A program made the position numbers and the translations under genes. From positions 2,170,001 through 2,234,000 of the forward strand of contig NEEC01000018.1 of NCBI GenBank assembly GCA_002189035.1: a stretch of DNA of 64,000 nt. The letters run 5' to 3'. Positions 129 to 42,793 of this stretch are shown one piece after another; position 1 is the first letter of the stretch; every line of letters begins with the position of its first letter. Under the pieces are notes generated by a model, which had not been told where the DNA came from, ran no database searches, and was given only the letters and a program-made list of their open reading frames with translations. Origin of the DNA: Utricularia gibba. Its lineage: Eukaryota; Plantae; Magnoliophyta.

Positions 129-596
129 GACGTAGATATATTGTGGCTGCGTAATCCACTGCATCATTTCTTCCCGGAAGGGGATTTTCAGATGGCATGC
201 GACTTCTACAGGTTTGGACCCACGGATAGGAGAAACAACCACAACTGCGGATTCATGTACATCAGGTCCAACCCCAGGACAATACGATTCCTCAAATTCT
301 GGTACGACTCTCGAGATTATGATCTTTCAGATCACGAACAGAATGTGCTCTACGTACTCAAGTTCAATCCGGTAGTAGATGAGATGAACATGACGATGCG
401 CTTCTTCGATACTAACTACATCAGCACTTTCTGCCAGCCAAGTAGGGATCTGGATCATGTGGTGACCATGCACGCAAACTGTCGCGTTGGCCTCCGCGCG
501 AAACTCCGTGCTCTTACAGTCGTGCTCAACGACTGGAAGAGGTATATCACGTCGTCAGAGAGGAACAAATCTTGGTCAGTCACCAGGTTTCCTTAG
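129..596 (+). CDS. Nucleotide-diphospho-sugar transferase (GT77/Nucleotid_trans-like), last exon only; 5' exons lie before the window (copy a)
   Basis: Acceptor ttttcag|GAC at 128/129, then DVDILWLRNP (DxD), FQMACD, N-CGFMY, EQNVL, VVTMHANC, stop at 594-596. Closely similar to the last exon of copy b (7235-7702). Confidence 0.9.
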   Translation, partial: DVDILWLRNPLHHFFPEGDFQMACDFYRFGPTDRRNNHNCGFMYIRSNPRTIRFLKFWYDSRDYDLSDHEQNVLYVLKFNPVVDEMNMTMRFFDTNYISTFCQPSRDLDHVVTMHANCRVGLRAKLRALTVVLNDWKRYITSSERNKSWSVTRFP

Positions 597-1532
597 TGAT
601 CTGTATCGTTTATATTTGTTATTTGAACACAGTGTTTGCTGTGGTGCCTCATTGTTTTGGGATGAAGAGGTTAACCATTCAATCGTCCACAATCTCAGAG
701 AGCAATAAATAAGAAACAGTATCATTATATGCTAAATAAATAAGCAAAAGTTTTATATGTGATGTTCTTCTTCTTCATCATTCGTGAAACTCTGCATGCG
801 CGCTTGGAAGTTGGAACGTTGTAAGGACCAATCTCAAACCATAACCCTAAATCCCATAAAATAAAATGATATTAATGGAAATCATATTGATTATAAATAC
901 GAATAGTTCGAAATTCTTATAGTCAAACCATTTGTTTCGTGAAATTTGTTGATGTTTCGTTCTTTGGCGATCAAATTCCAACAAGTTTCGTCCACTTGAG
1001 TTGAACCTGAATACAAATGCATTGTTTGTTATTGGACAAACTATCAAAATGATACCTTTAGTAGTAATTATATGTGCTTATTATAAAATGTTCTTTTGTT
1101 TTCTTATCGCTTTTTTACTGTTTTTCATCTCCAGATGATTTTCTTTGTCCATTTGTGGTTTCTCGGGACTATCTTGCCGCCATTTGTCCTGGTTGGCAGA
1201 AGTCACATTAAAACCTAAAACTGGAAAATGGATTACGAATTTATATTTGTGTATTGACTTGGTCTGTTATTTTCTCCTTTTTCTTTTCCGTGACACGATC
1301 TGAATCAGGGCACAGGATCAAAATGATGCTCGAAAATATTCCGGCGGCTTGAGTGGTAACGAAAATACCCGTATAACACGGCACAAAATAACAAGTAGCA
1401 CCCCAGGTTCACTTCAAACCAACGAGTCGTACAACGACTTTTTATTATCTTCAGCACAGATCGACAGAAACTCTTACAAAAGGTCCATACTTAGCATTGA
1501 AACAGGGACGCAAATGTTCGCCTCTCAGAACA

Positions 1533-2779
1533 TTAGGATAAGATCCAATGTTCGCCGTGGACGCCCACTCGCAATCCATGAATCTTAGCAAATAGGTTAA
1601 CCGCTCTGTTCACACCATCCATAACAACATCGTGGCCAAAGAGGACACCACCAGGGCGCAATACCTGTTGTACAGACATTACATATGGTAACAATAACGT
1701 CATCCAACACCAGTCAGGCACTATAGAAACTTGTATATATACATATTAAACACATCCTATCATTTTATCCAGGGACTACTCTCCAGAAAAGATTCTAACA
1801 GCCGGGGTATCACCCTAACTGAGTCAATCTTTGGAACACTGGTTTGGATTTTGTTTTCTAATTTCGCATTTTCAGGAGATTTTTCTGAACATTAAATAGA
1901 AAAATATAATTCTTGCAAATGGTAGGTTGATTAGTAGGAGCAAAAAGTTTCATGGATTATATTTACCTTGTAGCCGTTGTTGATGTCATCCCAGGCGGAG
2001 TGGAAGTCGTGGGCGGCATCGATCTCAACCAGGTCACCGTAAATACCCCAGGCACAGAGAGCATCGAGGGCACTTGTTGAAGAGAAGGGTAGAAATATGA
2101 TGTTTTCGGTGGCATTGGCAAGAGCAACATTCATCATGTACTGTTGGAGAAGGATGCTGTCACCGTTGAGCATTTTAATGGCTGGCCCATTGCCAGTATC
2201 AGCAAGCAAAGGCCAACCACGGAAGTCGTCAACACAGATGATTTGGGTGCCGAGACCTAATTTATTTGTGAGTGCCGCCATGTGCGTTGCCGATGCCCCC
2301 AGAAACGACCCGACTTCGATTATGGTCTTGGGCATGACCTTTCTTATCAGGTGCTCGAACACTGGATTGTGTGAGCCCCATACAACTTTCCAATCACGGC
2401 GTAGGTGCGGCGCCAAGTGCGGCGGAGGGAAATTCTGCCAGGGTGATACCCCGGCAAACACCTTATCGATAATTTTTCGACGCTCGGTGCCCTTGGGGAC
2501 GGCGCTGCTACACTTGATGTAGCTGAAATCATTGTGATCATCAATGGTAGTAGTGACGGTTTTTTGAGGAGGATTGATATGGTAATTAGATATGTATCCC
2601 AAAGTAAAACCGGTAACGATGAGGATGACTAAAATAGCTGGCCAAGCAACTTTCCTGGCTTCCTCGTTCGACGGGGATCTGTTCGCAGGGCGAAGCGAAG
2701 GAAGCAGTTGATTTGGATCAATATCCTCTTTCATTTTTCCTTCTTCTCCGTATACTCTCGATAGACGAGAGAAGGCCAT
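1533..2779 (-). CDS. Membrane-anchored class I SAM-dependent methyltransferase (Methyltransf_24-like), MT1; exons 2779-1967 and 1664-1533
   Basis: Hydrophobic N-terminal segment AILVILIVTGFTLGYI. SAM motif IIEVGSFLGASA, plus ICVDDFRGW and EIDAAHDFHSAW. Donor AAG|GTAAAT at 1967/1966 and acceptor CAG|GTA at 1665/1664 join NGYK to VLRPGGVLFGHD...HWILS*. Confidence 0.88.
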
Positions 2780-2786
2780 TTATAAC

Positions 2787-6220: not shown

Positions 6221-7702
6221 ATGAGTTCGCCAGTGGCGGGAGGTAGTACCTCCTCCTCCCTGGACTCCCACGGCGATCCAAGTAATCTTAGGAAACGCCG
6301 CCTTTTCATTGTCGCCGGAAGGGATGTTGAGTTGACCGTGATAATATTTGTAGTAATAAGTCTCCTTGTTATCACTGCAAGACGACTTACACATGGTGAT
6401 TCCAAGCTGGTGTTAAGGAGATCTTCTACAACTGCATCCGGATATTGTGATCTCGCCAGGGAGCCCCCGGTAAGATAATCATCTCTCTCCGCGTGCGACT
6501 ACTGGTACTGATTTATCACTAGAATTATTCAACTCCGTTGCATAAGCTAGCCAGATGTGTAACTGGTTTACGACGTAAGCTGGCAAGTAACCTTAGTGAA
6601 CTGAAAATTTTGTGGGAGACAGTTCACAGCAGATAAGCAGAAGCTGAAGAACATGTTAGAAGATGCGGTGATGGAAGACAAGAAGACAGTGATTTTAACA
6701 ACTATAAACGATGCCTGGACGGAACCAAATTCGACCTTTGATTTGTTCCTCGAGAGCTTTCGAGTTGGAAATCAGACTCAACACCTACTCAACCATATGG
6801 TACTTTTCTCGTACGACCAAGTTGCATATTATCGCTGCTTGGCATTAAACCTCCATTGCTTCCCACTGCACACCGACAATGACTTTGGTGGCGATAGGGT
6901 TTTTATGGACGCAGAATACTTAAACATGAATTGGGGAAGGCTTGATCTTCTGAGAATCGTGCTTGAGTTGGGATACGATTTCGTTTTCACGGTAAATGGC
7001 TTCATCTTCTATCCAGTTACTATTAACATAAACCTGTATCATTAATTCTACTTTCATTGCTCCATCGACAACGTTGCATCGTAAGTTGTGGAATGCATGA
7101 AAATCTCATTCCTATAGTTTTCCCCTTTTGAAAATTCACCAATTTTGTGTCTCGTGTGTGGTTAATTTTTTAGGTTTTCAACATTTTCCCTTTGTATCAT
7201 TTTATCGAAGCGTCATATTGCTGAATATTTTCAGGATGTGGATATACTGTGGCTGCGTAATCCAATGCATCACTTCTACCCCGAAGGCAATTTTCAGATG
7301 GCATGTGACTCCTACAAGTTCAATTCCACCGATAGGAGAAACGTCCAAAACTGTGGATTCTTTTACATTAGATCCCATCCTAAAACCATAAAATTCTTCA
7401 AATTCTGGTACAATTATCGCGATTACTATAACGGAGCTCATGAGCAAAGTGCACTCGACGATCTCAAGTTCCATCCCCTGGTAGATGAGATGAACATGAC
7501 GATGCGCTTCTTCGATACTAACTACATCAGCACTTTCTGCGAACCAAGCAAGGATCTGGATCATGTGGTGACCATGCATGCAAACTGTCGTGTTGGACTC
7601 CCCACCAAACTCCGTCCTCTTACCATCGTGCTCAACGACTGGAAGAGGTATATCGCCTCGTCGGAGAGGAACAAATCCTGGTCAGTCACCAGGTTTCCTT
7701 AG
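6221..7702 (+). CDS. GT77/Nucleotid_trans-like glycosyltransferase copy b; exons 6221-6469, 6623-6991, 7235-7702 (about 361 aa)
   Basis: Basic KRR then TM segment (VELTVIIFVVISLLVITA). KTVILTTINDAW, FDLFLESF, LGYDFVFT|DVDILW (DxD split by intron), HANC. All junctions are GT-AG and phase 0. Confidence 0.92.
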
Positions 7703-8660
7703 TCATCTGCATCGCTTATATTTGTTATTGCTGTGGTACTTCATTTTAAGCTGTAATGTTGACACCAACGCGAATAAGATTCTAATTCCCCACTAAAATA
7801 ATTATTTATCTGTTTTTTAGCAATTAATTTAGACGTGGAATAAGTTATAGAAAATCTATTTTTGTAAAACAAAAAAAAAAAAAAAATCTGAGTAGCCGCT
7901 GTAATGTCTTTAGATGCGTACACATGAGTCTGGTGGTGTGTGCGACTCTAGTTCCATTACTTCACCATGTTTGCAATTTTTAATTCTGAGTACGAGTAGC
8001 CGCTTTGAGGCTTGAGGAACCAAGTAAATGGACTGACTACTCACTACTAGTGTTGATCTTCACTCTTTTAAAACTCGGGTTCAATTCGATAACTCGAATT
8101 CAGGGTTATTTGGATTCAATTCAATTATTTTATAAAAAATTTAAAAATATTTAAATTATTTTTATTTGAATTCATTGAAATTAAAGATTTGATGAATCGA
8201 ATGACCACACCTAAACCATAAGTGCACATCAAATATGAATCACATTAAAAAAAATTAAGTCCAATCGATTATTAATAATTTATAATTTTTTATATAATTA
8301 TCTATTTCAATTTTATTTTCCGATGTAAGATTAATTGTACTAATAGAATTCAATTCAATTCATTATAAAAAGTGTTTAATTAAAAATCATATATAAATCA
8401 TAGTTTAACCCTATTTTAAAACAGTATTGATCTTACATCTTGCACTAGAACAATAAGACTTCAAATCAATTGTCTTCAAAATTGGTTTTGGTGTCAAAAA
8501 AATGTTTTCCAAATTGTTTGGTGAAGTCGTTTACTTTTCTTCCATGGCTCAAAAGTGGTTTCTGAGGAAAATCTGCCTTTTTTTCAAGCTGATTATGATT
8601 ATGACAACATTTTAGTATCCGTATCGCGCACGACATAGAACATGAATGACGTCGATCATA

Positions 8661-10202
8661 CTAAGGAAACCCAGCCACGGACCAGTTCTTCGCGGAGGGT
8701 TCGTTTTTTGGTGAAGCAATATACCTCTTCCAGTCACTCAGGACGATCTTGAGGCCTCGTAGCTTTACCTGCATTCCAACGCGACAATTCGCATGCATGG
8801 TCACAACTGTATCAAGATCCTTGCTTGGCTCGCAGAAAGTGCTGATGTAGCTCGTATTGAAGAACCGCATCGTCATGTTGACCCGAGCTATGAATGGGCT
8901 GAATTTGATGCGGTTAAGCACATCCTGCTCGTTCACTCCAGGGAAGTAAACCTGAGCATGGTTCCAGAACTTAAAAAATTTTATAGTTCTGTTGCTGGAT
9001 TTCACGTAGAGGAATCCACAGTTGGGGCTGTTTCTCCTGTCTGTGGAGCCGAACTTGTTAGAGTCGCACGCGATCTGGAAATCACCATCCGGGTAGAAAT
9101 ATTGGAATGGATTGCGCAACCACATTATATCGACATCCTGAAATTTGAAGTTGGGTGAAACTTCTCTTAGCATGCGCTACAACACTCACAAAAGACAATG
9201 CAGTTGCAATGCTCTAAGAAATGCACGAGTGATGAAAAGCACCCAATGCCTTGTGCGATGCGCCGGGCGAATGTATGTGATTTACTTACCAGTTTTATCT
9301 GTCAAATCTCGAATTACATGCTTCTAATCAATTGAGGTAGTAAAAAAGGGTTCTTGCCATGGATGGCCAAGTGTTACCGTGAAGACGAAATCGTATCCCA
9401 ATTCAAGCACAGTTCCCAGAAGTTGAAGTCTTCTCCACATCATATAGAGGTAATCTGCGCTCATGAAAACCTTCTGACCGGACAAGTTAATGTCACTTTG
9501 TAGTGCATAGCAATGAAATCGTCCAGCCAGGCAACGAGAATATGCAATTTCATCAAACGCCACAAATACCATGTGGTTAATAAGCTTTTGAGTCTGATTT
9601 CCAATTCGAAAACTCTCGAGAAATAAATCGAGTGTTGAGTTGGGCTCCGTCCACGCTGCGTTTAAAATTGTTATAATCACTGTTTTCTTGTCCTCCATCA
9701 CCGCCTTCTCTAGTACCTTTTTGAGCTCCGCCTTCTCTTGAGTTTCCTGTTTCACAAAATATAGACAAACTAGCATTCAATTAAATTGGATATGGAATAA
9801 AAGTAACACAGATTTGAAGCTAAGAACTTCCCCAGAATGTGACCCCGCGGAATGACCATTTCATTCCCAATTCCCAAGTGTACTAGGAATGTTCCTCTTG
9901 TGATTTCGTTTGGAATCATAATAGATTGACTAGCCGATCACCTGGGAGTCTTTTGTGTGATAGCCTGATTCTGCTCCAGGACAAGATTCAGATGCGACGG
10001 AAGACGATTCCCGAAAGTACATCCTGAGATCACCATGGCCAAAGTGCCTTAGTGTGACAACAAGTATACTGATGACCACAAAAAGTATAACCATCGTCTC
10101 AACATCCCTCCCCACGACAAAAAATCTGCGCTTCTTCACAACACTCCGATTGTACTCCGAGTCGGGGGCTGAGCTGCTGCTCCCTTCCATCATGGAAGCC
10201 AT
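8661..10202 (-). CDS. GT77/Nucleotid_trans-like glycosyltransferase copy c; exons 10202-9942, 9746-9378, 9137-8661
   Basis: Same three-exon layout as copy b (exon 2 is 369 nt). Motifs KKRRFFVV-TM, TILNAAW, YDFVFT|DVDIMWLRNP, NCGFLY, NEQDVLN, TMHANC. Confidence 0.92.
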
Positions 10203-13340: not shown

Positions 13341-13343
13341 CAA

Positions 13344-13595
13344 GGGTGCATTTGGTTGGATGGAAATGTGTTGATTGGGTTTAGATAATTTGGGTATAAT
13401 TTATATGGGTATAGATGGGTATTCTCAAAACCCATCTAATTAGTGGGTTTAAAAAATACTTACAAATTAGATTTATGAAGGGTTTTATGTGAGCTTTGGT
13501 GTAAAAACTAGTTAAATATTTAATAAGATATCAAATAAGGGTATCTTTTATCAACCCACTTATACCCAATTTGTATCAAACAACCAAACACACCT
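13344..13595. mobile_element. Tourist/PIF-Harbinger-like MITE (252 bp)
   Basis: 3-bp TSD CAA at 13341-13343 and 13596-13598. Ends GGGTGCATTTGG and CCAAACACACCT. The paralogous empty site ccgCAAgagattt is at 19011-19023. Confidence 0.85.
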
Positions 13596-13740
13596 CAAGA
13601 GATTTAGCTGAGTAAAGAATTAATAGCCCTAATGGAAGGCTAATTGCATTAATCAGTTAATTGAATTCGTGGAGTGGAGCTTGCAGCCCTAATCGGTCTA
13701 CTAGCCCACAAAAGATTTTAATTTCTTTTTATTGAGCCCA

Positions 13741-14360
13741 CAATTACTCCTGATCTCTTTTGCGAGCCCTTTCCGGGTGGGTGTTCTAGCTCCCTTCAGA
13801 CTTTCCATTGCTTGATAAATTCAAGAACTTCACCAAGTACTCAAATGACAGCTTATTCAAGAACTTCACCAAGAACTTCCCTTTCCGGGTGGGTATCTCA
13901 GAATTGTTGAGACAAAGCTCGTCAGGAAATTCAAGTATCTCTTCACCAAGACAACCTTATGTCTATATGCACGTTAATCAAGATTACCACGATCACGACA
14001 AACGTTTCTATTGTGAAGAAGGGCTGTTGTTTATCCAAGACGTGCCATGGCTGATAATGATGTCAAACCAGTACTTCTTCTCGATGCCACGCTTTGTTCA
14101 AGAATTGCAAAATCTTTTCCCCGACAAGGAGACCGTTTTTCACTAGCTGGGGCGGTACATGTTCCACCCCACAAATTCGGTATGGGGGCTTGTTAGAAGG
14201 TTTTATGATGGATATCTTGCTGAGACGGACCTCAAAGTAGGTGTCCAGATCCGAATTTATCACTACGAAATAATTTCCTTCCCGTTTGTCGCCGATCAGG
14301 TCCTTTCATGCACCATGAACGAGGGTATACTTTCACGTGTCTACTCGCAACAGCATGACT
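13741..14360 (+). pseudogene. Internal fragment of the GT37 fucosyltransferase (copy of about 20252-20830), truncated at both ends
   Basis: Near-identical DNA to FUT-A (caattactcc...cgtgtctac). Lacks N- and C-termini. Has stops, a 9-nt loss at aaccagtacttc-ttctcgatg and a templated insertion at about 13855-13900. Confidence 0.9.
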
Positions 14361-15679
14361 TCGTTGAATCGATAACCCTTCGAACAAGTCAGAAAATTAT
14401 ATTTAACTTTTACAAATATAATTTATGTTTTTTATATACTTTGACTTCAATCAAATCTTTAATTTCAACTAACCATACTTGGATTGGTGTCGGTTAAATC
14501 TAAAAAAAACTTCGATGATGATCCGTTGATGAAAATATTTTTTTTTGTATACTTTTAGTGTGTTTTTTCACCAACACAATAGAAATTGAATCCTAATAAT
14601 TTTGAGCATAAGGTGCACGAATTTAGAGTTCTAATGGATTAAAGATTTGATAATATTGTTGCATCAGACATCCAAATTTGTTAAAATACTACACACAAAT
14701 GTTTCTATACATCCATAAACATATTTTTTTCAATCGAATGAATGACAAATCTTTTAACACATGATGGATATTCATAAATAGAATTAATCAAAAAATTATA
14801 ATTTATGAGATATCATTGGATACAATTGCGATTAATCAATGTTTTTAAATGATTAAATTAATATGAATATATAACTAATCCATTCTATGATTTAAAAAAA
14901 TATAATTTATGACATCAAAGAGTAGTTCGACTGGAAAGTGGGTATTAGAACACATAATCCCACAACGAAAAAATAAAAAATGAAAAAATCAAATATATAT
15001 TAGAGATTGCAAATCATTTATAATTGATTGAAGTTAACTTTTTTTAATGTGATCTATCTTTGTTATGTAATTGAGATTCACACATGTTTCCATGATCAAT
15101 TGAATTCTTAATTTCAATACGAATTCAAGATGGTGAATATTGCGTAGAGACGTCAGCACAAAACAAATTGCGATACAGAATATCGTGCATACGATGACTG
15201 GTAGTTGATGTTTTATTGAAAGAGTTGGAAACTCGGTTGTCATTGGTTGCCGTTGGGAGTTCTGGTTTTTGAGGAATATGCAGAGGGCTTTGAAGCAACG
15301 CGTGGATGATAAAAGAGAGGGAGAGGGAGAGACATGAAGATAAATGTTTACATTGAAACAAACTCAAGTTTGAACCACACAATAATCTAACATTTTGAAA
15401 AGATGTCGAACGAAAAATTACTGATGGAAGTTAAGCCACCTTTGGTTGGGGTGTTTAGGTGGGTTTTAATATAGGTTTAGCAATAAACTCATATTTGATA
15501 CATGGGTTGCAAGTAGGTAAAAATATACTTATCTTGTCCCTATACATCCATCAACAACCTGTACTGATAGATTTACATAAATGGAAGGGGAGAGATCGGT
15601 TTATGTAGCATAACCGATTTCTTCCAATTTTGCCCTTCATCTGATATTAACACTTCTTTTTTAAAATAGATCTAGCAGA

Positions 15680-21352: not shown

Positions 21353-21372
21353 GTTATTCAATCATTTGAAAA

Positions 21373-21629: not shown

Positions 21630-23239
21630 TCAGGGAATGTAGCTTTGATTGTCAAACAGCATTGTGCCTCCGGGTGAGTCTGGGCATTCTTTAATATGAG
21701 GCCCGATGACGCTTGTACCAGCTGCACGTCTCATCTTACAATAGTATTTTGGAGGTGTGTGGTAACAAGGTTCGATGGTTAGGATCCGATAGCACGGTCG
21801 GTCTCGCTCACTCTCGAGCTTCGACTTGAAGAGAATCCATGGCATCAGGCCGCTCAGACCTTGAGCAGCATAGCCGAATGTTGATGTGGCGCTTACAACC
21901 AACTGATCGGTCAAGGTGAGTAAGTATATTTCTGCCAGTGCCTTCTTGTTGTGATGGTGATTCCCTGAGTCTTGGCGCTCTTCGAAGCTTGGTTGATGGA
22001 TGGCAATGGCATCTCCGGTTATCGTTGCGTTTTCCCAATACAATCGTCTCACGTAATCGAAGTAGCTGTGGTACAGTGAAGTTATCAGCAACACGATTCT
22101 CTTCTTCTTCTTGGGAATTAGGGTTTTTGTGAAATTTTCTTGCTCCTGAGCTTCTGTATGCGGTATCAAACCCTCGTTCGTGATGCAAGAGACAACCTGA
22201 TCCAATATTTCCTCGGGTGAGATTTTGTCGTAATTGAAGGTTCGGATTTGGAGGCCTACTTTCACATCATACCCGGACAGATAAGATTCATAAAATCTTC
22301 TTACAAGCCCCAGACTACGTTGTTTGGATTCAACAGATACCCACCCAGTAAGTGAAAAACAGCTCCCTTCTCGGGAAAGAGATTCTCCAGTTCGTGCTGA
22401 AAGCTTGGCATTGTAAACAAAGCAGGAAGAAAATATTGATTTGCCATCACGATTAACCATGGAATATCTTCAACATACGATTGCTCTTCGTCGCAAAAGA
22501 AGCGTTTATCAAGATCATCAGCAAAATTGTTGAGGTACACGTATAGATAGGGAAGTGGCAACGAATCACTTGAGTTGAATGATAAACCGTTTCCCACCCG
22601 CTCCCCAAAACTATCATTCAAACCTTTTTTAAAGTGCAGCATTTCATAGTGTAAGGGAAAGTCAACAGGAAGCAGCCATGAACCTTCTGGGAAGGGTTCG
22701 CAGAAAAGACCAGCAACAGTGTCTTCAGGATGAATGAGCAAAACGCGATCCGTCAGCAAAGCATGTAGAAACGCTGAAGCAACGCTGATCATTCTGTTTG
22801 CCAGGCCGCCGTTCGAGAACCATATGCTATACTTACAAGCAGATCGAACTGCAGACGTGTTGGCCCTCAGGGCAGCCACGGTGGTGTTATAAAGGTTCGT
22901 GTATGGAGCGCATCGCTTGTGCCGTGCTTCGTATGCGCGTAGCTTCGACATGAGATACGGAGAAGGTTTCCTTAGTGTTGGGCGTTGAAGCAAGAGAGAA
23001 TCAAACCTGCTAAGGCAGGAACTCTCATCAAATCTACCTGGGGGAAGGTCTTCGTTGATCTGCCTGTAGAAATAACCTCCCCGGTCGAGCTTGTAATCGA
23101 TGAGATAATTTTTCAATACTATGGAGATGTTGAACAAGAAGGATAAGCTCATCCCTGCGAGAAGAAGACCCCCGATAAACTTCAACAGATTTTGCGACAA
23201 CCATGTCTGGAAATGCTTCCAATGTCGTCTTCTATCCAT
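21630..23239 (-). pseudogene. GT37 fucosyltransferase FUT-B, full length but with a single 1-nt frameshift at about 22308-22311 (pseudogene or consensus error)
   Basis: ORF 23239-22301 (TM, GGLANRM, LFCEPFP, VFHLLG.YLLNP) ends VWGL*. ORF 22460-21630 continues GLVRRFY...VGLQIR...STFGYAAQGL...EPC.H. TGGGGCTT here has 4 G; TGGGGGCTT in FUT-A has 5 G. Confidence 0.88.
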
Positions 23240-23660: not shown

Positions 23661-23746
23661 GGTGACAGAAAGATGAAGAGCACTCATAGATTCGAGCATC
23701 AAGTGTACTGGAAAACACTTATGAGTGCCCTCCCTCTTCTGTCACC
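23661..23746 (-). ncRNA. MIR156: MIR156/157-family precursor hairpin; predicted 5p mature UGACAGAAGAGGGAGGGCAC at 23744-23725
   Basis: Arms ggtgacagaaagatgaagagcactcat (23661-23687) and atgagtgccctccctcttctgtcacc (23721-23746) are complementary. The minus strand pairs better, because G:U replaces A-C. The 20-mer differs by 2 nt from the miR156 variant UGACAGAAGAGAGAGAGCAC. Confidence 0.85.
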
Positions 23747-27290: not shown

Positions 27291-27293
<3 letters not shown>

Positions 27294-27325: not shown

Positions 27326-27329
<4 letters not shown>

Positions 27330-29948
27330 GGAAGGTGACAACGTATAGCGTTCTTCTTCAGAGCTCAGCTAGAGTTCTGATTTTCGGTTTTTTTTTTAGC
27401 ATCATAATAATTCTGGTCGACTTTCCTGTCTTTAAAGACGGGGAGAATTCGAAGGGGAAGCAAGCTCCTGTTCGTCCTCTTTATTCCGCAAACCCAAACA
27501 AACGAAAGGAGTTGCCAAAGCCTTGGCTTTCCAGCTTGAATTTATCTGCAGCCATTTTAAATACGACCTCCGAAACACATCATATGAAGACAACAAGAGA
27601 AGCTATTGTACTAGGCAGACAGCTCTGGGAAGAAATTGAGTTGATCCACGGTGAGGCTAGTAAAAGGTCCCATGCTAAGAGTGACTCGAAGCCTTGCAGG
27701 CATTCGATATCGGTTGCTAGGGATGAATTCGCGAAGAATGAGAATTTGCTAGTTTTGCCTTGTGGGCTCACTTTCGGCTCGGCTATAACAATCGTTGGAA
27801 CGCCGAACGGTTCACAGTTGGTGGTAGAATTGCAGGGAATAAAGATAATGGAAGAGGAGTACACACCGAGATTCCTGCATTTTAATCCAAGGTTGAAGGG
27901 CGATTGGAGTGGGAAGCCTGTTATTGAAATGAATACTTGTTACAGATTTCAATGGCGAACTCCACAACGTTGTGAAGGTTTGAGGTCCCAAGCAGATGAG
28001 GAGACTGGTCAGTGCGATATTTATCAAGTTTTGCGTTAAATTTACGCTTTCCATGTATTGTTTCCTATGTAAAAATCTAAAATTTATTTCACACCTTACT
28101 TTTGTTTCTAGTTACTTGAAACATCCTTTTTGTGTTAGAAAATTATGCTCACTTTTGAATAAATTGAGACTAAAAGGAACTCTGGAAGCAAATTTAGGCT
28201 GTCGGTTGGAAATTATCCATGAGAATAGCAATACTTATGCACCCATTTTGGCTTAATTTTCTGCAGTTGACGGAATGGTCAAGTGTGAGAAGTGGATACT
28301 CGATGAGGATTACAAGCTAGAGAAATCCAATGTTACACGGAAAGCAGCAAATGCATCAGTTGATTGGCCATTTCCATTTGCACAAGGCAAAGTATTCAGT
28401 CTCACTCTCACAGCGGGCTTGGAAGGTTATCACGTCAATGTGGATAGGGAGCACCTCGCCTCCTTTCCATACCCCATTGTGAGAACTACAATGTTTAATT
28501 TTTTTAAAATGATATTTCAGAGTACTAAATTTTCACTCATATCCACCAGGGGTTCAGTCTGGGAGATGCCACCGGATTGTCAATAACCGGGGATGTGGAG
28601 GTTCAATCGGTTCATTGCGCTTCACTGCCATCATCATACCCCACATTTTCCCCCATGAGTCATCTTGAATTTTCTGAAAGATGGAAGGCACCACCTCTTA
28701 ATGATACGCCAGTTGAACTTTTCATTGGTGTTATTTCTGCTGGAAGCCATTTTACTGAAAGGATGGCTATAAGAAAGTCTTGGATGCAGCATCACTTAAT
28801 CAAGTCAACCACAGTTGCTGCACGCTTTTTCGTTGCATTGGTGAGTTCGCAAGACTTCGTTTTTGTATTTTTATCATTCTGCACACTCGGAATTGAACCT
28901 TCGGTCATCACTTGCTCCAAAGGGGCCTATGAATGTCATAGCCACACAGGCTTTGTCAAAATATCCATGAACTTACGTGTGCCTCCATGTTGCATAGAAT
29001 GGAAGGAAAGAGATCAACATGGAAGTACTGAAGGAAGCCGAGTTTTTCCAAGACACTGTTATAGTACCACACGTGGACTTCTACAACCTCACTGCTTTGA
29101 AAACTGTTGCCATTTGCGATTACGGGGTCAGCAGTCCATATTTTACTACACACTGTTTTTCTTATTATTCTACAAATCCGCTTCCAACTAACTCAACAGT
29201 TGTTTTTTCAGGTAACAAGAATTCCATCAAAATATATTATGAAGTGTGATGATGACTCGTTTATAGGGGTAGGTGGTATTATTCAGGAACTGAGAAAATT
29301 TGAAAATAAGAGCAGCTTGTATATGGGGAATATGTTGTATAATAATATGCCAACGCGTAGTGGTAAATGGACTATGAGCTTCGAGGTACTCTCTCTCTCT
29401 CTCTCTCTAGCTTATTTGTGTGAAAAATGAGCCTCTTTCTTTTTTTAGTTTTACCGGTTTTGTACTTATGCCCTTCTACAGATGTGTGTTTTGTGCCTTT
29501 TTATTTTTTCTGAATGTACAATTGGCTTACTACTTTTTAGGAATGGCCCGACAAGCCATTTCTTCCCTACGCATGTGGGCCGGGTTATATTCTATCACCT
29601 GACATTGCAAAGTACATTGTTTCCGAATTTAATCATCACAGACTTCCGGTAAGCGTAGAAAAGTTTCCTTTCCTTCACAACTACAATCACCAGTTGGATC
29701 TCAGTGAGTTTCTTTTTTTTCTTTTTCTTTTGTTCCAGTTATGCTCATTGGAAGATGTTGCAACCGGAATATGGGTGTCCAGCTACAATACTACTGTGCC
29801 AGTTAAATACATCCACAACTCCTCGAAGTTCTGCACTAAAGAGTGCGCAGAGGGTTGCATAGTGTCTCATTACCAGACTCCGCGGCAGATGTTTTGCATA
29901 TGGGACAAGTTAACTCGTTTCGAACGCCCTGCTTGTTGCAATAAGTGA
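27326..29948 (+). CDS. GT31 beta-1,3-galactosyltransferase with galectin domain (hydroxyproline O-galactosyltransferase GALT2-6-like); exons 27326-28007, 28267-28478, 28550-28840, 28998-29126, 29212-29385, 29541-29648, 29739-29948
   Basis: TM near the N-terminus. LPCGLTFGS.IT.VGTP, LHFNPRLKGDWSGKPVIEMNTCYR.QW, DGMVKCEKW, WPFPF, LFIGVISAG.HF.ERMA.RKSWMQ, KYIMKCDDD, GPGY, EDV. All seven exons join in frame at GT-AG sites. Confidence 0.93.
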
Positions 29949-33099: not shown

Positions 33100-33295
33100 T
33101 GTGCAAGTACCCCCGCAGATAAGCTGCGGCCAGAAGGAAGACTGATGCAACTAGTTTACCAATGCTCTTGTAAGGATTTGAATCATCTTATTTCCCATAA
33201 TGCTTACGGTAGTTATGATGTTGAAAGCTCTGTGATTCTTGTAAGGAAAGTGAGGTTATTTATAGAACTTCTTAGATCAAACAGAAGTACATTAA
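33100..33295 (-). pseudogene. Relic of the 5' UTR and exon 1 of the MT2/MT3-type methyltransferase
   Basis: ATG at 33198 gives ATGGGAAATAAG-ATGATTCAAATCCTTACAAGAGC, against MT2 ATGGGGACTAAGGATGATTCACATCCTTACAAGAGC (1-nt loss). Upstream ctgtgattcttgtaaggaaa.tgaggttatttatagaactt is shared with 42825-42865. Confidence 0.82.
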
Positions 33296-36686: not shown

Positions 36687-38299
36687 TTAAGGAAACCCAT
36701 CCACGGACCAGTTCCTCGCAGAGGGGTCGGTTCTGGGTGACGCCATATACCGCTTCCATTCACTCAGGACAACCTTGAGCCCTCGTAGCTTAACATCCAG
36801 GCCAATGCGACAATTCGCATGCATCGTCACAACTGTGTCAAGATCCTTGCTTGGCTCGCAGAAAGTGCTGATGTAGCTCGTATTGAAGAACCGCATCGTC
36901 ATGTTGACCCGATCTATGAATGGGCTGAATTTGACGCGGTTAAGCACATCCTGCTCGTTCGCTCCAGGGTAGTAATCCTGAGCATGGTTCCAGAACTTAA
37001 AAAATTTTATAGTCCTGTTATTGGATTTGACGTAGAAGAATCCACAGTTGAGGTTGCTTCTCCTGTCTGTGGAGCCGAACTGGTTAGAGTCGCACGCGAT
37101 CTGGAAGTCACCTTCTGGGTAGAAATATTGGAATGGATTGCGTAACCACATTATATCGACATCCTGAAATTTGAAGTGGGGTGAAACTTCTCTTAGCATG
37201 CGCTACAAAACTCACATAAGACAATGCAGTTGAAATGCTCTAAGAAATACACAGGTGATGAAAAGGGGAGAATGCACCCAATGCCTTCTGCGATGCCCTG
37301 GAAGAACGTGCGTTATGAGATTTACTTACCAGTTTCATCTTTCAAGACCTCGAATTACATTTTTCTAATCAATGGAGGTAGTAAAAACGAGTTCTTGCCA
37401 TTGATGGCCGAGTGTTACCGTGAGGACGAAATCGTATCCCAATTCAAGCACAGTTCCCAGAAGTTGAAGCCTTCTCCACATCATATAGAGGTAATCTGCG
37501 CTCATGAAAACCTTCTGTGCGGACAAGTTAATGTCACTTTGTAGCGCATAGCAATGAAATCGTGCATCCAGGCAACGTGAATACGCAATTTCATCAAACG
37601 TCACAAATACCAAGTGGTTAACAAGCCTTTGAGTCTCATTTCCAATTCGAAAACTCTCGAGAAATAAATCGAGTGTTGAGTTGGGCTCCGTCCACGCTGC
37701 GTTTAAGGTTGTTATGATCACTGTTTTCTTGTCCTCCATCACCGCCTTCTCTAGTACCTTTTTGAGCTCCGCCTTCTCTTGAGTTTCCTGTGTCATAGAT
37801 AAACTAGCATTCTATTATATCAGACATGGAATAAAAAACAACCAAGAACACACATTTGACGCTAAGAATTTCCCCAGGATGTGACCAGGCGGAATCACCA
37901 TTTCACTCCCAATTCCCAAGTGTATTTTGTGTGTCCTGATTGAAGTTTTAAGTGTTTCTTATGATATGGTTGGATGAAATCTTCATATCTTCTGAATACT
38001 GAAGATAATGTTCCTCTTGTGATTTCGCTTGGAATCACCTGGGAGTCTCTTATCCGATCACCTCCTTCTGCTCCAGGACAAGATTCAGATGCGACGGAAG
38101 ACGATTCCCGAAAGTACATCATGAGATCTTCTTGGCCAAAGTGCCTAACTGTGACAACAAGGATACTGATGACCACAAAAAGTATAACCACCGTCTCAAC
38201 GTCCCTCCACACAACAAAAAATCTGCGCTTCTTCACATCACTCCGATAGTACTCTGAGTCGGGGACTGAGCTGCTGCTCCCTTCCACCAAGGAAGCCAT
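36687..38299 (-). CDS. GT77/Nucleotid_trans-like glycosyltransferase copy d; exons 38299-38039, 37787-37419, 37163-36687
   Basis: Same exon lengths as copy c (261/369/477 nt) and closely similar sequence, including introns. DVDIMW DxD motif and HANC. Confidence 0.92.
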
Positions 38300-39112: not shown

Positions 39113-40090
39113 TTAAACCAAGATCCAGTGCTCTTCATCGACCTTGACTTGGAAGCCATGGATCTTAGCGAAGAGCTCGACGGCTCTTTTGACGCCATCC
39201 AAAGCGATATCGTGGCCAAACAGAACACCCCCGGGGCGAAGAAGCTTGAACCCATTGTTTATGTCAATCCAGGCGGAGTGGAAGTCGTGAGCCGCATCGA
39301 TCTCCACCAGATCGGCGTAGATGCCCCACGTGCAAAGCCCGTCGAGTCCATTCGTAGTGGAGAAGGGCAGGAATATGATGTTTTCAGTAGCATTGGCGGT
39401 GTCCACATTGAGCATGAATTGGTGTAGAAGGATGCTGTCGCCGTTGATCATTTTTATTGGTGGGTGTAAGGGCCAGCTCCGAAAGTCGTCCACGCAGATG
39501 ATCAGGGTGTCGAGGCCTAGTTTCCGGACGATCCTCGCCATGTGGGTCGCCGAGGCGCCGAGGAAAGTTCCGGCTTCGATGATGACCTTGGGCTTCACCT
39601 GACGTGAAAAAAAAAAAAAAAGCTCGCTTCACGTTGAAGAGTTTACGGCAATTTAACTAGCCTTTTTTTTTTACCTGGGCAATCAGGCGTTCGAAAACTT
39701 GGTTGTTTGAGCCCATTCCACCCCATATCGTCCAGTCACGGCGGAGATGCGGAGCCGTGTTCGGCGGAGGGAAGTTTTCCCAAGGCGATGGCCCCTGGAA
39801 AACCTTGTCGAGAATGACTTTTCGCTCGGTGCCGCTGGCGACGGGGTCAGCGCATTTGATGTAGGAGAAATCTTGGTGATCTTCGAGTTTAGATACCTGT
39901 GGGAAGTAAATCAACACAAGATTTGATCAAAATGATTGAACCTCATAACTGATTTTACCGGTGGAGGATTCGGAGATATGGTTTGGTTATGAGAGGAGTA
40001 TCCCAGCAGAAAAGCTGTGGCAAAGACGATGACCAATGCAGCAAGTTTACCAAGGCTCTTGTAAGGATGTGAATCATCCTTAGTCCCCAT
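39113..40090 (-). CDS. Membrane-anchored class I SAM methyltransferase MT2; exons 40090-39959, 39896-39675, 39598-39113 (279 aa)
   Basis: TM LAALVIVFATAFLLGY. IIEAGTFLGASA, ICVDDFRSW, EIDAAHDFHSAW, LRPGGVLFGHD. Phase-0 GT-AG introns. Confidence 0.9.
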
Positions 40091-40439
40091 AATGCTTACT
40101 GTAGTTATGGATGCTGAAATGTCTGTGATTCTTGTAAGGAAAATGAGGTTATTTATTTTGAAAAGATATCAGACGAAAAAGTACTGATCGAAGTACTAGT
40201 TAAGCCGTTTGGTTGGGATATTTAGGTGGGTGTTAATGTAGGTTTAGCAATAAACCCATGTTTGAAAATGAGGTGTGACAATGGGTTTTAATTAATTAAA
40301 AGGATATATTGATAATTTTACACAAAAAAATCAATAAAATCATAGTTTTATACCCATGTACTAAATATATTTTGATTTTAAATCCAAATAAATTATAATC
40401 ATTAACCAAACAAAGATTATCTTTTAAACTAACAAAAAT

Positions 40440-40860
40440 ATATTTATCATCAACAAAAACATGATAAATAATTATTTCTTAAATACACAATTTTAATAAA
40501 ACATAATTATGTTTTTAAATTATTACTTGTTTTATAAATTAATTTCATTTGACTTACAATCCATTACAAGAAGTTTCCCATTGTGTGGTGTCATTCCCGC
40601 ATCGCCCCGACTCGGGGACACGTGTGTGTACAACAAAACACATGAGCATGTGGTCAGGAGTCGCGACGGTGGCCGTGGATTTGCTGGCATGCGTCCGCTC
40701 GAACACCTGGAACGGAATCCGACAAGAAATAGAAAACACCGAATCCATTTTGCGATCCCAAGCTCTGGAAAACAGCACACCAGAGCAAAAAGAAGGAAGC
40801 AGGCAGCAGCACGCATCTCCTTCCACTTTGGGTTCTCGGGTGACCCATTTTCGAAATGGG
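40440..40860. repeat. Duplicated block, paralog of 35720-36125
   Basis: Direct sequence similarity. This copy has an extra ggtcaggagtcgcgacggtggcc segment. Confidence 0.85.
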
Positions 40861-41813
40861 AATCTCCACACTTCCCTAGGAAACCAAACCCCAGTCCCAC
40901 TTAACCCGAGTGAGGGCCCAGAGAGTGGTTAACTTAACCACGGTCAGGCTAGCCATTTCGAACCGGAACTTGAAACTTGAACTTGAATCCATTATCGCGC
41001 ACTAATTGCATTTTTAATTCCATTCAATACTCATCATTTCCTAGGGCCAAACAATAATGTGTTGCTGTCCCTAGTGATTTGGGAGATTTGACCAACGGGG
41101 CTGCACTCCCACTGCTTGCTGTTCCACTCTTCATCTTCCCCATTGACTAGTAGGGCAAAAGGGTCACTCTTTTTTTTTTCTTCGAATTTGAGATCCTGTG
41201 GAGTAGGATGTCAACGTAGAAGGGATACATAAATGCAGTGGGAGTTAGATGAGGGAAAGAATGGGAGGTCTAGACGTGACCCCAATTATCATAATAATCA
41301 CTCGAGTCAATTATAAGTGCAACTAATGACATGCACATTAAGATCAAAGGGTAAGTTCACGATCGTTAATCTTATTATATAATATTGCAGGTTTCGAACA
41401 TTTAAATTTTCATAATTTTATGTTTTATTCTTTTGGGATAAAGATCTTTAAGAGAATGGTACGGTTTAGAGTACTAAATTACCCTAAATGGTCAATTTTT
41501 TGTTCTAGTGGCTGAACACAAATCGAATTCATAACACTTCACACTGTTTTAGGTCAACGGGTAGAGATGCACACGTCCGGGAACTATGTGACACTGTATA
41601 CTTTACTATATAAAAATGTTAGAAGGAAAATGGGACAATTAATATCGACGTGTCGAAGGATCCGTGTCGCTTGTTTCAAAAGGACACGTGAAAAATGAAA
41701 ACGTCGCATGGAGATGAAATTTTATTTTGGGGTTGAACGAGTACACGTCCCTTAAGCTTGAGGAAAAGAAGCATGAAATTGAGCATGCATGTAAGTGTGA
41801 TGCAATTGGGAAG

Positions 41814-42793
41814 CTACACCAAGATCCAGTGCTCTTCATCGACCTTGACTTGGAAGCCATGGATCTTAGCGAAGAGCTCGACAGCCCTTTTGACGCCATC
41901 CAAAGCGATATCGTGCCCAAAGAGGACGCCCCCGGGGCGGAGGAGTTTGTACCCATTGTTTATGTCATTCCAGGCGGAGTGGAAGTCGTGTGCCGCATCG
42001 ATCTCCACCAGATCGGCGTAGATACCCCACGTGCATAGCCCGTCGAGGCCGTTCGTGGTGGAGAAGGGCAGGAATATGATGTTTTCAGTAGCATTGGCGG
42101 TGTCCACATTGAGCATGAATTGGTGTAGAAGGATGCTGTCGCCGTTGATCATTTTTATTGGTGGGTGTAAGGGCCAGCTCCGAAAGTCGTCCACGCAGAT
42201 GATCAGGGTGTCGAGGCCTAGTTTCCGGACGATCCTCGCCATGTGGGTCGCCGAGGCGCCGAGGAAAGTTCCGGCTTCGATGATGACCTTGGGCTTCACC
42301 TGACGTGAAAAAAAAAAAAAAAGCTCGCTTCACGTTGAAGAGTTTACGGCAATTTAACTAGCCTTTTTTTTTTACCTGGGCAATCAGGCGTTCGAAAACT
42401 TGGTTGTTTGAGCCCATTCCACCCCATATCGTCCAGTCACGGCGGAGATGCGGAGCCGTGTTCGGCGGAGGGAAGTTTTCCCAAGGCGATGGCCCCTGGA
42501 AAACCTTGTCGAGAATGACTTTTCGCTCGGTGCCGCTGGCGACGGGGTCAGCGCATTTGATGTAGGAGAAATCTTGGTGATCTTCGAGTTTAGATACCTG
42601 TAGAAAGTTGAAGTGAATCAACACAAGATTTGATCAAGAGGATCAACACAAGATTTATCACCGGTGGAGGATTCGGAGATATGGTTTGGTTATGGGAGGA
42701 GTATCCCAGCAGATAAGCTGTGGCGAAGAGGATGACCGATGCAGCTAGTTTACCAAGGCTCTTGTAAGGGTGTGAATCATCCTTAGTCCCCAT
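41814..42793 (-). CDS. Membrane-anchored class I SAM methyltransferase MT3; exons 42793-42662, 42597-42376, 42299-41814
   Basis: Tandem paralog of MT2 with the same exon lengths (132/222/486 nt) and motifs. Confidence 0.9.

What the first reader, a model, noticed from the sequence alone, without database searches (positions are those of the whole stretch)
129..42793. Candidate plant glycan-decoration gene cluster: GT77 x4, GT37 x2, GT31 x1 and membrane-anchored SAM methyltransferase x3
Seen in sequence: within about 43 kb almost every intact gene encodes a predicted type-II membrane enzyme from four non-homologous families. They are interleaved rather than in single-family arrays, and the block ends abruptly at a housekeeping PP2C. 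Established: GT31 GALT2-6 start Hyp-galactans on AGPs; GT37 FUT1 fucosylates xyloglucan and FUT4/6 fucosylate AGPs; GT77 includes RGXT, RRA, XEG113 and RAY1; O-methylated sugars such as 2-O-Me-Fuc occur in RG-II. Inference: the genes form a co-regulated pathway for a methylated, fucosylated AGP, pectin or mucilage glycan. Described plant biosynthetic clusters are mostly for small metabolites, so a Golgi-glycan cluster would be unusual.
Basis: partly seen in the sequence, partly recalled or inferred. Interest (0 to 1): 0.9.

Follow-up and report, generated by a model that had tools for sequence, protein, structure and literature searches.

The report
Lineage-specific block of Golgi glycan-enzyme genes
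A 43-kb stretch of a plant genome (probably from the bladderwort family) really is filled with membrane-anchored sugar-modifying enzyme genes from four unrelated families, but nothing yet shows that they work together on one glycan.

Summary
Positions 1-42,793 carry four GT77 genes, three membrane-anchored SAM O-methyltransferases, two GT37 fucosyltransferases plus a GT37 fragment, and one galectin-GT31 gene. They are interleaved and end at a PP2C gene. The only other recognisable feature is a MIR156-like hairpin.

Corrections:
- One GT37 copy has a 1-nt frameshift.
- One GT77 copy is cut by the window edge.
- A methyltransferase remnant lies at 33.1 kb.
- The GT77 genes belong to the uncharacterised At4g15970-like clade. 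They are not RGXT, RRA, XEG113 or RAY1.

Trees show each multi-copy family is one in-place expansion, so the block reduces to four founder genes. Duplicates are under purifying selection (Ka/Ks 0.07-0.37). RNA contigs show one GT77 and one methyltransferase transcribed and spliced.

In 12 loci from other plants, none holds a second of the four families within 10 kb. The block is therefore lineage-specific.

Co-regulation or a shared acceptor could not be tested properly. The few RNA runs hint at discordant presence.

My estimate is about 50% duplication-driven co-location without a shared pathway and about 33% a true glycan pathway cluster. This is an interesting candidate, not a demonstrated cluster. 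An earlier, unchecked scan note reports a second Golgi-GT block elsewhere in this genome.

The parts
123..593 (+). GT77a, last exon only. The upstream exons lie beyond the window start.
   Evidence: Pfam PF03407 3.7e-30. It is 78% aa identical to GT77b.
1533..2779 (-). MTa: membrane-anchored class-I SAM O-methyltransferase, 314 aa, 2 exons (2779-1967 and 1664-1533)
   Evidence: Methyltransf_24 3.2e-6 and a weak CmcI match. Spliced model. The homologues are the uncharacterised At1g01180/At4g01240-type proteins.
6221..7702 (+). GT77b: 361 aa, 3 exons. Exon 1 encodes the membrane anchor. DVD motif present.
   Evidence: Pfam matches. Gene model.
8661..10202 (-). GT77c: 368 aa, 3 exons
   Evidence: Pfam 3.9e-36 and 6.5e-16. 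Gene model. The block 8528-10274 is 88-89% nt identical to the GT77d block.
13668..14497 (+). GT37 pseudogene fragment, a partial copy of FUTa together with its upstream DNA
   Evidence: tblastn gives 77% aa identity to FUTa residues 207-406. Pfam XG_FTase matches profile positions 186-339 only. The stretch 11847-14358 resembles 17604-20841.
19736..21352 (+). FUTa: GT37 fucosyltransferase, a single intact exon with an N-terminal anchor
   Evidence: XG_FTase 1.1e-160. AtFUT1 scores 482 bits against 420 bits for AtFUT4.
21633..23239 (-). FUTb: GT37 copy with a 1-nt frameshift at about 22301-22306. It is either a recent pseudogene or an assembly error.
   Evidence: Two overlapping ORFs. The junction was read. 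Ka/Ks of the N-terminal part against FUTa is 0.09.
23662..23745 (-). MIR156-like hairpin inside the block. It is not an enzyme gene.
   Evidence: Rfam RF00073 56.5 bits (gathering score 62), E 2.9e-11 for the 601-base stretch searched, full model length matched. No match at the gathering threshold.
27326..29948 (+). GT31 with galectin domain, GALT2-6 type, 7 exons. Approximate exon coordinates: 27326-28009, 28266-28472, 28550-28840, 28995-29135, 29212-29385, 29541-29645, 29745-29948.
   Evidence: Pfam matches. Exon-by-exon tblastn to GALT homologues. Source names of the hits are B3GALT19 and Hyp-O-galactosyltransferase.
33106..33295 (-). Remnant of the 5' end of a methyltransferase copy
   Evidence: 85% nt identity to the exon-1 regions of MTb and MTc.
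36687..38299 (-). GT77d: about 368 aa, 3 exons, transcribed
   Evidence: Pfam 1.4e-36. An RNA contig in run X1 joins exon 1 to exon 2 and skips 251 nt with GT..AG ends on the minus strand. Gene model.
39113..40090 (-). MTb: 277 aa (the string, 279 aa, carries two residues upstream of the ATG at 40090), 3 exons, transcribed
   Evidence: Methyltransf_24 6e-13. Gene model. The X1 contig 39226-39602 continues into the end of exon 2, so the 76-nt intron is spliced out.
41814..42793 (-). MTc: recent tandem copy of MTb, 98% aa identical
   Evidence: Ks 0.11 and Ka/Ks 0.07 against MTb.
43231..45558 (-). PP2C gene, multi-exon, marking the right border of the block
   Evidence: PF00481 2.4e-8 on the exon at 44423-44584. 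ORF translations.

Best explanation
This is a real but lineage-specific physical block. It was built from four founder genes:
- an At4g15970-like GT77;
- an At1g01180/At4g01240-like membrane-anchored O-methyltransferase;
- a GT37 fucosyltransferase;
- a GALT2-6-type GT31.

In other Lamiales these genes sit in separate, partly conserved neighbourhoods. In this fast-evolving lineage, probably Lentibulariaceae, they became neighbours. Three of them were then amplified in place by repeated local duplication, in an old wave and a recent one. Most copies are kept under purifying selection, and a few are decaying.

Each product is predicted to be a type-II Golgi enzyme that adds or caps sugars on secreted glycans. 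On present evidence the co-location is best explained by genome rearrangement plus tandem-prone families. The copies may be retained for dosage. A single shared pathway is not needed to explain it.

Shown: the genes, their topology, the duplication history, selection on the copies, transcription and splicing of GT77d and an MTb-type gene, and the lack of the cluster in relatives.

Inferred: Golgi location, the enzymatic activities, and the absence of functional coupling.
For: Trees:
- MTa, MTb and MTc form one clade (100/99), sister to the Genlisea aurea protein (98/94).
- GT77a-d form one clade (100/100), sister to the Gesneriaceae At4g15970-like genes (96/87).
- FUTa and FUTb form one clade (100/100).

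Duplication history:
- The self-comparison shows several local duplications.
- Ks values fall into waves: 0.9 or more, saturated, for MTa vs MTb/c, GT77a/b vs c/d and FUTa vs FUTb; 0.55 for GT77a vs b; 0.1-0.25 for GT77c vs d, MTb vs c and FUTa vs the fragment.
- Ka/Ks is 0.07-0.37 for the intact pairs.

Relatives:
- 12 loci of the nearest homologues were fetched from Erythranthe, Brassica (two), Cochlearia, Genlisea (two), Sesamum alatum (two), Primulina, Dorcoceras and Striga (two).
- None carries a second of the four families within 10 kb, either by called genes or by tblastn on the DNA.
- The FUT-rotamase adjacency is shared by Sesamum and Striga.
- The GT77/G-patch adjacency is shared by Primulina and Dorcoceras.

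Each family is tandem-prone elsewhere:
- MT pairs occur in Erythranthe, and three MT proteins with near-consecutive locus tags lie on one Ulmus minor contig.
- GT77 arrays occur in Cryptomeria and Primulina.

RNA:
- X8 and X9 hold 5-6% of the words of the FUT-GT31 stretch.
- They were not listed as holders of the GT77d-MT stretch, and nothing from X8 could be laid on it.
Against: - Four loci in a row from the Golgi glycan machinery are expected only about 0.001-0.005 times per genome by chance.
- The founders appear to have moved here from different ancestral neighbourhoods. Recruitment by relocation is a hallmark of plant biosynthetic clusters.
- GT77 and MT genes are interleaved in two places, and their deep paralogue splits are of similar age.
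- The proteins sit on long branches yet remain under purifying selection, which would fit a new function.
- An unchecked scan note reports a second Golgi-GT block in the same genome.
- The RNA evidence against co-expression rests on tiny contig sets, so absence from a run proves little.
Confidence: 0.5

Rival explanations
1. This is a true Golgi-glycan biosynthetic gene cluster, and the four enzyme types act on one secreted glycan. The most coherent version is an arabinogalactan-protein-like or mucilage glycan:
- the GT31 starts Hyp-galactan;
- the GT77 adds a pentose;
- the GT37 adds fucose;
- the methyltransferase O-methyl-caps a terminal sugar.

Clustering and amplification would then serve co-regulation or dosage in secretory cells.
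For: - The co-location is unlikely by chance within one genome.
- The founders were recruited from different ancestral sites.
- Copies show purifying selection on long branches.
- GT77d and an MTb-type transcript are both present and spliced in run X1.
- The model of the nearest homologue of the window's methyltransferases (Genlisea P0001) best matches MeT1, whose title names no substrate; from memory it is a polysaccharide sugar O-methyltransferase. The model also matches the sugar O-methyltransferases MycF and SpnH, within the cation-dependent O-methyltransferase fold.
- Source names place the GT31 with the Hyp-O-galactosyltransferases.
- Members of the same uncharacterised GT77 group are specific to the mucilage layer in Plantago (PMC3675317) and are STK targets in the Arabidopsis transmitting tract (PMC7219087).
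Against: - There is no co-expression evidence, and the few runs look discordant.
- The block is not conserved in any relative tested.
- FUTa resembles the xyloglucan enzyme AtFUT1 more than the AGP enzyme AtFUT4.
- GT37 acceptors range over xyloglucan, AGP, RG-I and RG-II (PMC10933551).
- No member of this GT77 clade or this methyltransferase family has a known substrate.
- Most computationally seen plant clusters turn out not to be pathways (background knowledge).
Confidence: 0.33
2. This is an RG-II side-chain A module. An RGXT-type GT77 would add xylose to fucose, the neighbouring methyltransferase would make 2-O-methyl-xylose, and the GT37 would add the fucose.
For: - No RG-II O-methyltransferase had been identified by 2025 (PMC12168206).
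- RGXT4 is At4g01220 (PMC12168206). At4g01240 is annotated as an uncharacterised SAM-dependent methyltransferase; its membership of this family was not tested. The locus numbers suggest the two lie close together in Arabidopsis, but this was not tested here.
- AtFUT8 acts on RG-II (PMC10933551).
Against: - The window GT77 genes are not of the RGXT clade.
- In an HMMER search of 1.84 billion cluster representatives, all 20 top hits whose names I looked up are At4g15970-like, At1g28695-like or unnamed.
- In the tree the window genes nest inside the asterid At4g15970-like group.
- The At1g01180-type MT loci in Brassicaceae have no GT77 neighbour.
Confidence: 0.03
3. The block is partly an annotation or assembly illusion. 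Several members would be dead copies or collapsed or duplicated assembly, leaving only a few working genes.
For: - FUTb carries a frameshift.
- There is a GT37 fragment and a methyltransferase remnant.
- MTb and MTc are 98% identical.
- The X5 contig differs from MTc at 17 of 401 bases.
Against: - Nine genes give complete, stop-free spliced models with their catalytic motifs.
- Ka/Ks is well below 1.
- RNA contigs confirm two splice junctions.
- MTb and MTc differ at Ks 0.11 and in the length of their first intron (62 against 64 nt), so they are distinct loci.
Confidence: 0.07

Closest known systems
Plant biosynthetic gene clusters for specialised metabolites (for example avenacin, thalianol, momilactone; from background knowledge)
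   Same: Non-homologous enzyme genes lie side by side. They were assembled in one lineage by relocation and local duplication, and they are absent from the syntenic sites of relatives.
   Different: The known clusters make small molecules with cytosolic or ER enzymes (terpene synthases, P450s, UGTs), and they are defined by co-expression and genetics. Here every member is a predicted Golgi type-II glycan enzyme, and neither co-expression nor a product is shown.
Single-family tandem arrays of wall glycosyltransferases. Examples from memory: Arabidopsis FUT4/5/10, FUT6-9 and RGXT1/2. Example seen here: the Cryptomeria At4g15970-like array.
   Same: GT77, GT37 and the methyltransferase each expanded in place. 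These families form arrays in other plants too.
   Different: Here four unrelated families are interleaved in one 43-kb block instead of forming one array per locus.
GT77 At4g15970/At1g28695-like clade (uncharacterised)
   Same: The closest named homologues belong to this clade, and the window genes nest in it. They share the Nucleotid_trans domain, a DxD motif, type-II topology and a length of about 360 aa.
   Different: Identity to any protein found is 54% or less. No member of the clade has a known donor or acceptor. The clade is distinct from RGXT, RRA, XEG113 and RAY1.
AtFUT1 (xyloglucan alpha-1,2-fucosyltransferase, PDB 5KOE/5KOP) and AtFUT4 (PDB 9NQH)
   Same: The full-length GT37 domain matches: 482 bits to AtFUT1 and 420 bits to AtFUT4.
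   Different: FUTa and FUTb sit on a very long branch apart from the conserved FUT1-type orthologues of 39 other plants. The acceptor cannot be inferred.
Mycobacterium hassiacum MeT1, MycF, SpnH and COMT-type cation-dependent O-methyltransferases
   Same: The model of the nearest homologue of the window's methyltransferases (Genlisea P0001, pLDDT 82) matches this fold. MeT1 is the top match at E 2.8e-9, with TM 0.64 normalised by target length. CmcI is the only weak sequence match in the PDB.
   Different: Identity is only 15-20%. The plant proteins carry an N-terminal membrane anchor and a stem of about 100 aa. The substrate is unknown.

Membership tests
CAZy GT77 / Pfam Nucleotid_trans | PF03407 domain above the gathering score | tested here: met
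   All four copies match, with E from 1e-11 to 1e-36.
GT77 RGXT clade (RG-II xylosyltransferases) | Closest relatives and tree position lie within RGXT1-4/MGP4 | tested here: not met
   The nearest named proteins are At4g15970-like. The tree nests the window genes in that group. No named RGXT sequence was included in the tree, so the test rests on names and top hits.
GT77 At4g15970-like clade | Monophyly with proteins named At4g15970(-like), plus type-II anchor and DxD motif | tested here: met
   The window genes are sister to the Gesneriaceae At4g15970-like proteins (96/87) inside the asterid group. The anchor and the DVD motif appear in the models.
CAZy GT37 fucosyltransferases | Full-length XG_FTase domain and similarity to solved AtFUT1 | tested here: met
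   FUTa: 1.1e-160 over profile positions 24-475 and 482 bits to 5KOE. FUTb meets the test only if read across its frameshift.
GT37 xyloglucan-specific FUT1 orthologue | Orthology to AtFUT1, with Gal of xyloglucan as acceptor | tested here: inconclusive
   FUTa scores higher to AtFUT1 than to AtFUT4. However, the FUTa/FUTb pair lies outside the conserved FUT1-type clade on a long branch. Activity is not testable with these tools.
GT31 Hyp-O-galactosyltransferases GALT2-6 | Galectin domain followed by a Galactosyl_T domain, with GALT2-6 as nearest relatives | tested here: met
   The galectin domain is significant. The Galactosyl_T pieces are each sub-threshold but match in the right order. All exons align to GALT-type proteins. 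Source names are B3GALT19, GALT4 and Hyp-O-GALT. Separation from GALT1 by a tree was not done.
Class-I SAM methyltransferase, Methyltransf_24/CmcI type | PF13578 above the gathering score, SAM-binding motif, Rossmann-type fold | tested here: met
   PF13578 scores 50-52 bits for MTb and MTc and 28.4 bits for MTa, against a cut-off of 26.3. The invariant residues include E143, G145, D172 and D173.
Sugar O-methyltransferase acting on a wall glycan | Demonstrated methyl transfer to a glycan hydroxyl | not testable with these tools
   Only the fold resemblance to MeT1, MycF and SpnH is available. At1g01180 and At4g01240 are uncharacterised in the papers found.
Plant biosynthetic gene cluster | Three or more non-homologous enzyme genes physically adjacent | tested here: met
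   Four families lie within 43 kb with no other recognisable protein gene between them.
Plant biosynthetic gene cluster | Co-expression of the members | tested here: inconclusive
   Only small contig sets were available. X1 holds parts of both stretches. X8 and X9 hold only the FUT-GT31 stretch. X5 holds only an MTc-like piece.
Plant biosynthetic gene cluster | Members act in one pathway on one product | not testable with these tools
   No biochemical or genetic data are available.

The most novel reading that the evidence does not exclude
This would be the first plant gene cluster for a Golgi-made glycan. It would have been assembled de novo in a carnivorous or aquatic Lamiales lineage from four relocated founders and amplified in place. 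Its product would be a fucosylated, O-methylated AGP-like or mucilage glycan. It would also assign a first function to both the At4g15970-like GT77 clade and the At1g01180/At4g01240 methyltransferase family.
Probability: 0.3. Interest if true: 0.8.

Novelty: new variant of a known kind. Interest (0 to 1): 0.45.

Why it matters
Plant wall and glycoprotein glycans are built by hundreds of Golgi enzymes. Most have unknown acceptors, and their genes are normally scattered.

If this block were a working cluster, it would link two wholly uncharacterised families to a fucosyltransferase and a Hyp-galactosyltransferase. Those families are the At4g15970-like GT77 clade and the membrane-anchored At1g01180/At4g01240-type methyltransferases. 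That would give a concrete, testable hypothesis for their substrates and for the origin of O-methyl sugars in a secreted glycan.

If it is not a working cluster, it still shows how tandem-prone families and genome rearrangement in a compact genome can mimic a biosynthetic cluster. That is useful as a caution for cluster-mining tools.

Tried and rejected
1. RG-II module idea (RGXT plus the xylose 2-O-methyltransferase). I dropped it once the GT77 genes proved to be At4g15970-like.

2. Conserved GT77-MT or FUT-GT31 adjacency in other plants. I used all 12 context look-ups, and none showed a second family within 10 kb. Striga has its FUT and GT31 on one contig, but about 750 kb apart.

3. This was not feasible. 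The protein search accepts only stop-free references and limits hit length, so multi-exon anchors could not be used. COPA lies too far from the block for 10-kb flanks.

4. ESM Atlas look-ups for GT77 and GT31. They gave only family-level names.

5. Sequence search of the methyltransferase against the PDB. It gave only marginal CmcI and COMT matches, so the fold search was needed.

6. Co-expression. Only seven to nine very small RNA contig sets exist for this organism, and only one read-laying run of 6 kb was allowed, so no real test was possible.

7. A search for other genes in the gaps. Twenty ORFs had no Pfam family above threshold.

8. A literature search for this kind of cluster, or for functions of At1g01180, At4g01240 or At4g15970. 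It found no characterisation.

Full report
**What is in the sequence**

tblastn of each exon against the window then mapped every copy. From left to right the block contains:

| Feature | Coordinates | Strand | Note |
|---|---|---|---|
| GT77a | 123-593 | + | last exon only; the gene runs off the window start |
| MTa | 1533-2779 | - | |
| GT77b | 6221-7702 | + | |
| GT77c | 8661-10202 | - | |
| GT37 fragment | 13668-14497 | + | pseudogene piece |
| FUTa | 19736-21352 | + | |
| FUTb | 21633-23239 | - | frameshifted |
| MIR156-like hairpin | 23662-23745 | - | 56.5 bits, just under Rfam's gathering score of 62 |
| GT31 with galectin domain | 27326-29948 | + | |
| Methyltransferase 5' remnant | 33106-33295 | - | 190 bp |
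| GT77d | 36687-38299 | - | |
| MTb | 39113-40090 | - | |
| MTc | 41814-42793 | - | |

A multi-exon PP2C follows (PF00481 2.4e-8). After it come DUF829, a BEL1-like homeobox gene and COPA. Twenty further ORFs in the gaps gave no Pfam family above threshold.

**Gene integrity**

- Spliced models give complete proteins with an N-terminal membrane helix for MTa (314 aa), MTb and MTc (277 and 279 aa), and GT77b, c and d (361-368 aa, with a DVD motif).
- FUTa is one intact exon.
- The GT31 gene has seven exons. All of them align to GALT-type homologues, including the GPGY segment.
- FUTb is otherwise full length. It carries a 1-nt deletion at about 22301-22306 that shifts the frame between ...VVWGL and VRRFY.... 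This is either a very recent pseudogene or an assembly error.
- The GT37 fragment covers only residues of about 171-426 of FUTa and is interrupted.

**Which subfamilies**

- **GT77.** The genes are not RGXT, RRA, XEG113 or RAY1.
  - An exhaustive HMMER search of 1.84 billion cluster representatives gave at most 54% identity.
  - All 20 hits whose names I looked up are "uncharacterized protein At4g15970(-like)", At1g28695-like or unnamed.
  - In a tree the four window genes form one clade (100/100), sister to the Gesneriaceae At4g15970-like genes (96/87).
- **Methyltransferases.** They belong to the uncharacterised plant family that includes At1g01180-like proteins. Two papers call At4g01240 an uncharacterised SAM-dependent methyltransferase. 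I did not check whether it belongs to this family.
  - An AlphaFold model of the closest homologue (pLDDT 82) matches the cation-dependent O-methyltransferase fold.
  - MeT1 of Mycobacterium hassiacum is the top match. The sugar O-methyltransferases MycF and SpnH are among the hits.
  - An O-methyltransferase acting on a sugar is therefore plausible, but it is not shown.
- **GT37.** FUTa scores 482 bits to AtFUT1 and 420 bits to AtFUT4. FUTa and FUTb sit together on a very long branch outside the conserved FUT1-type orthologues. GT37 enzymes are known to act on xyloglucan, AGP-type arabinosides, RG-I and RG-II (PMC10933551), so the acceptor is open.
- **GT31.** Its nearest named relatives are B3GALT19 and Hyp-O-galactosyltransferase-type proteins.

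**How the block arose**

- Each multi-copy family is a single in-place expansion. MTa, MTb and MTc are monophyletic and sister to the Genlisea aurea protein, which suggests a Lentibulariaceae-like source. GT77a-d are monophyletic, and so are FUTa and FUTb. The block therefore reduces to four founders.
- The self-comparison shows several local duplications:
  - the GT77c block resembles the GT77d block at 88-89% nt identity;
  - MTb resembles MTc at 91% nt identity over 1.2 kb;
  - FUTa and its upstream DNA were partly copied to 11.8-14.4 kb;
  - a repeat is present in three copies.
- Ks values fall into waves:
  - old and near-saturated splits for MTa vs MTb/c (1.35), GT77a/b vs c/d (0.9 or more) and FUTa vs FUTb;
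  - 0.55 for GT77a vs b;
  - 0.1-0.25 for GT77c vs d, MTb vs c and FUTa vs its fragment.
- Ka/Ks is 0.07-0.37 for the intact pairs, so the copies are maintained by selection.

**Is the block conserved elsewhere?**

No, in every case I could test. I fetched 12 loci around the nearest homologues.

| Family | Species | Neighbourhood |
|---|---|---|
| MT | Erythranthe | tandem MT pair beside a bHLH gene |
| MT | three Brassicaceae | At1g01180-type locus |
| MT | Genlisea (two loci) | no other family of the four |
| MT | Sesamum alatum | 50 Mb from the FUT on the same chromosome |
| FUT | Sesamum alatum, Striga | beside a rotamase gene in both |
| GT77 | Primulina, Dorcoceras | beside a G-patch gene in both |
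| GT31 | Striga | about 750 kb from the FUT |

Neither the called genes nor tblastn of the window proteins on the locus DNA found a second of the four families within 10 kb. The founders thus came from different neighbourhoods that are partly conserved in other Lamiales. They were brought together in this lineage.

**Expression**

Only a handful of very small RNA contig sets exist for this organism, and I could lay reads once.

- In run X1 a contig joins GT77d exon 1 to exon 2. It skips 251 nt with GT..AG ends on the minus strand.
- Another X1 contig covers MTb exon 3 and runs on into the end of exon 2, with two synonymous differences. The 76-nt intron is therefore spliced. Both genes are transcribed.
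- X8 and X9 hold 5-6% of the words of the FUT-GT31 stretch, but X8 gave nothing on the GT77d-MT stretch.
- X5 holds an MTc-like piece (4% divergent) and next to nothing of the FUT-GT31 stretch.
- This hints at discordant expression. The depth is far too low to count as a test.

**Chance**

If 1.5-2.1% of genes are glycosyltransferases (Arabidopsis has more than 573 GTs, PMC7866395), four such loci in a row are expected 0.001-0.005 times per genome. Over some two million genes scanned the expectation is 0.1-0.4. The co-location is unusual for one genome but not compelling across a very large scan. Genes are also not placed at random.

**Verdict**

  - one frameshifted FUT;
  - one edge-truncated GT77;
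  - an extra GT37 fragment;
  - a methyltransferase remnant;
  - a MIR156-like locus inside the block;
- The pathway interpretation remains open.
  - I put about 50% on duplication-driven co-location without a shared pathway.
  - I put about 33% on a true glycan cluster. An AGP-like or mucilage glycan is the most coherent version.
  - I put a few per cent each on the RG-II idea, which the clade assignment largely refutes, and on assembly or annotation artefacts.
- No paper I found describes a Golgi-glycan cluster of this composition, or a function for At1g01180, At4g01240 or At4g15970.
- Leads only: a GT77 of the same uncharacterised group is specific to the mucilage layer in Plantago (PMC3675317), and another is an STK target in the Arabidopsis transmitting tract (PMC7219087).

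**Limits**

- Orthology of the FUT genes is uncertain because of the long branch.
- I could not calibrate whether the long branches are genome-wide or specific to the block.
- The left border of the block lies outside the window.
- The species' own genome-wide gene order was not available.

Noticed in passing
window 1665-1966, 39599-39674, 39897-39958, 42300-42375, 42598-42661: The methyltransferase family is intronless in every other plant locus fetched; there, gene length equals the coding length. The window copies do carry introns: 302 nt in MTa, and 62/64 nt plus 76 nt in MTb and MTc. All lie between AG|GT...AG|GT boundaries. The 76-nt intron is spliced in RNA. First-stage notes list about 206 candidate intron gains in this genome, including a 62-bp introner-like element. 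These introns may belong to that genome-wide phenomenon.
   Followed up: partly
window 23662-23745 (-): A MIR156-like hairpin lies about 420 bp upstream of FUTb on the same strand. Rfam RF00073 scores 56.5 bits over the full model, just under the gathering score of 62, with E 2.9e-11 for the 601-base stretch searched. No match appeared at the gathering threshold.
   Followed up: partly
window 11847-13344, 17604-19017, 31848-32924: A repeat of about 1-1.5 kb without a recognisable protein domain is present in three copies (81-84% identity). Two of them lie directly upstream of FUTa and of the FUT fragment. It may have mediated the local duplications.
   Followed up: no
another piece of the same genome (note s1-202837): A first-stage note reports an uninterrupted 15-kb block of six Golgi-type glycosyltransferases from two unrelated families elsewhere in this genome. 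If real, blocks of Golgi GT genes are a recurring feature of this genome.
   Followed up: no
L006 and L012 (Sesamum alatum, Striga hermonthica): The nearest FUT homologues in two Lamiales families share the same neighbour, a rotamase/parvulin gene immediately downstream on the opposite strand. This marks a conserved ancestral FUT locus that differs from the window's context.
   Followed up: partly
window 27812-27830 region of GT31 exon 1: The galectin domain of the GT31 protein lacks about 20 residues that are present in the Striga homologue, between ...TIVGTPNG and SQLVVELQG.... The effect on lectin function is unknown.
   Followed up: no
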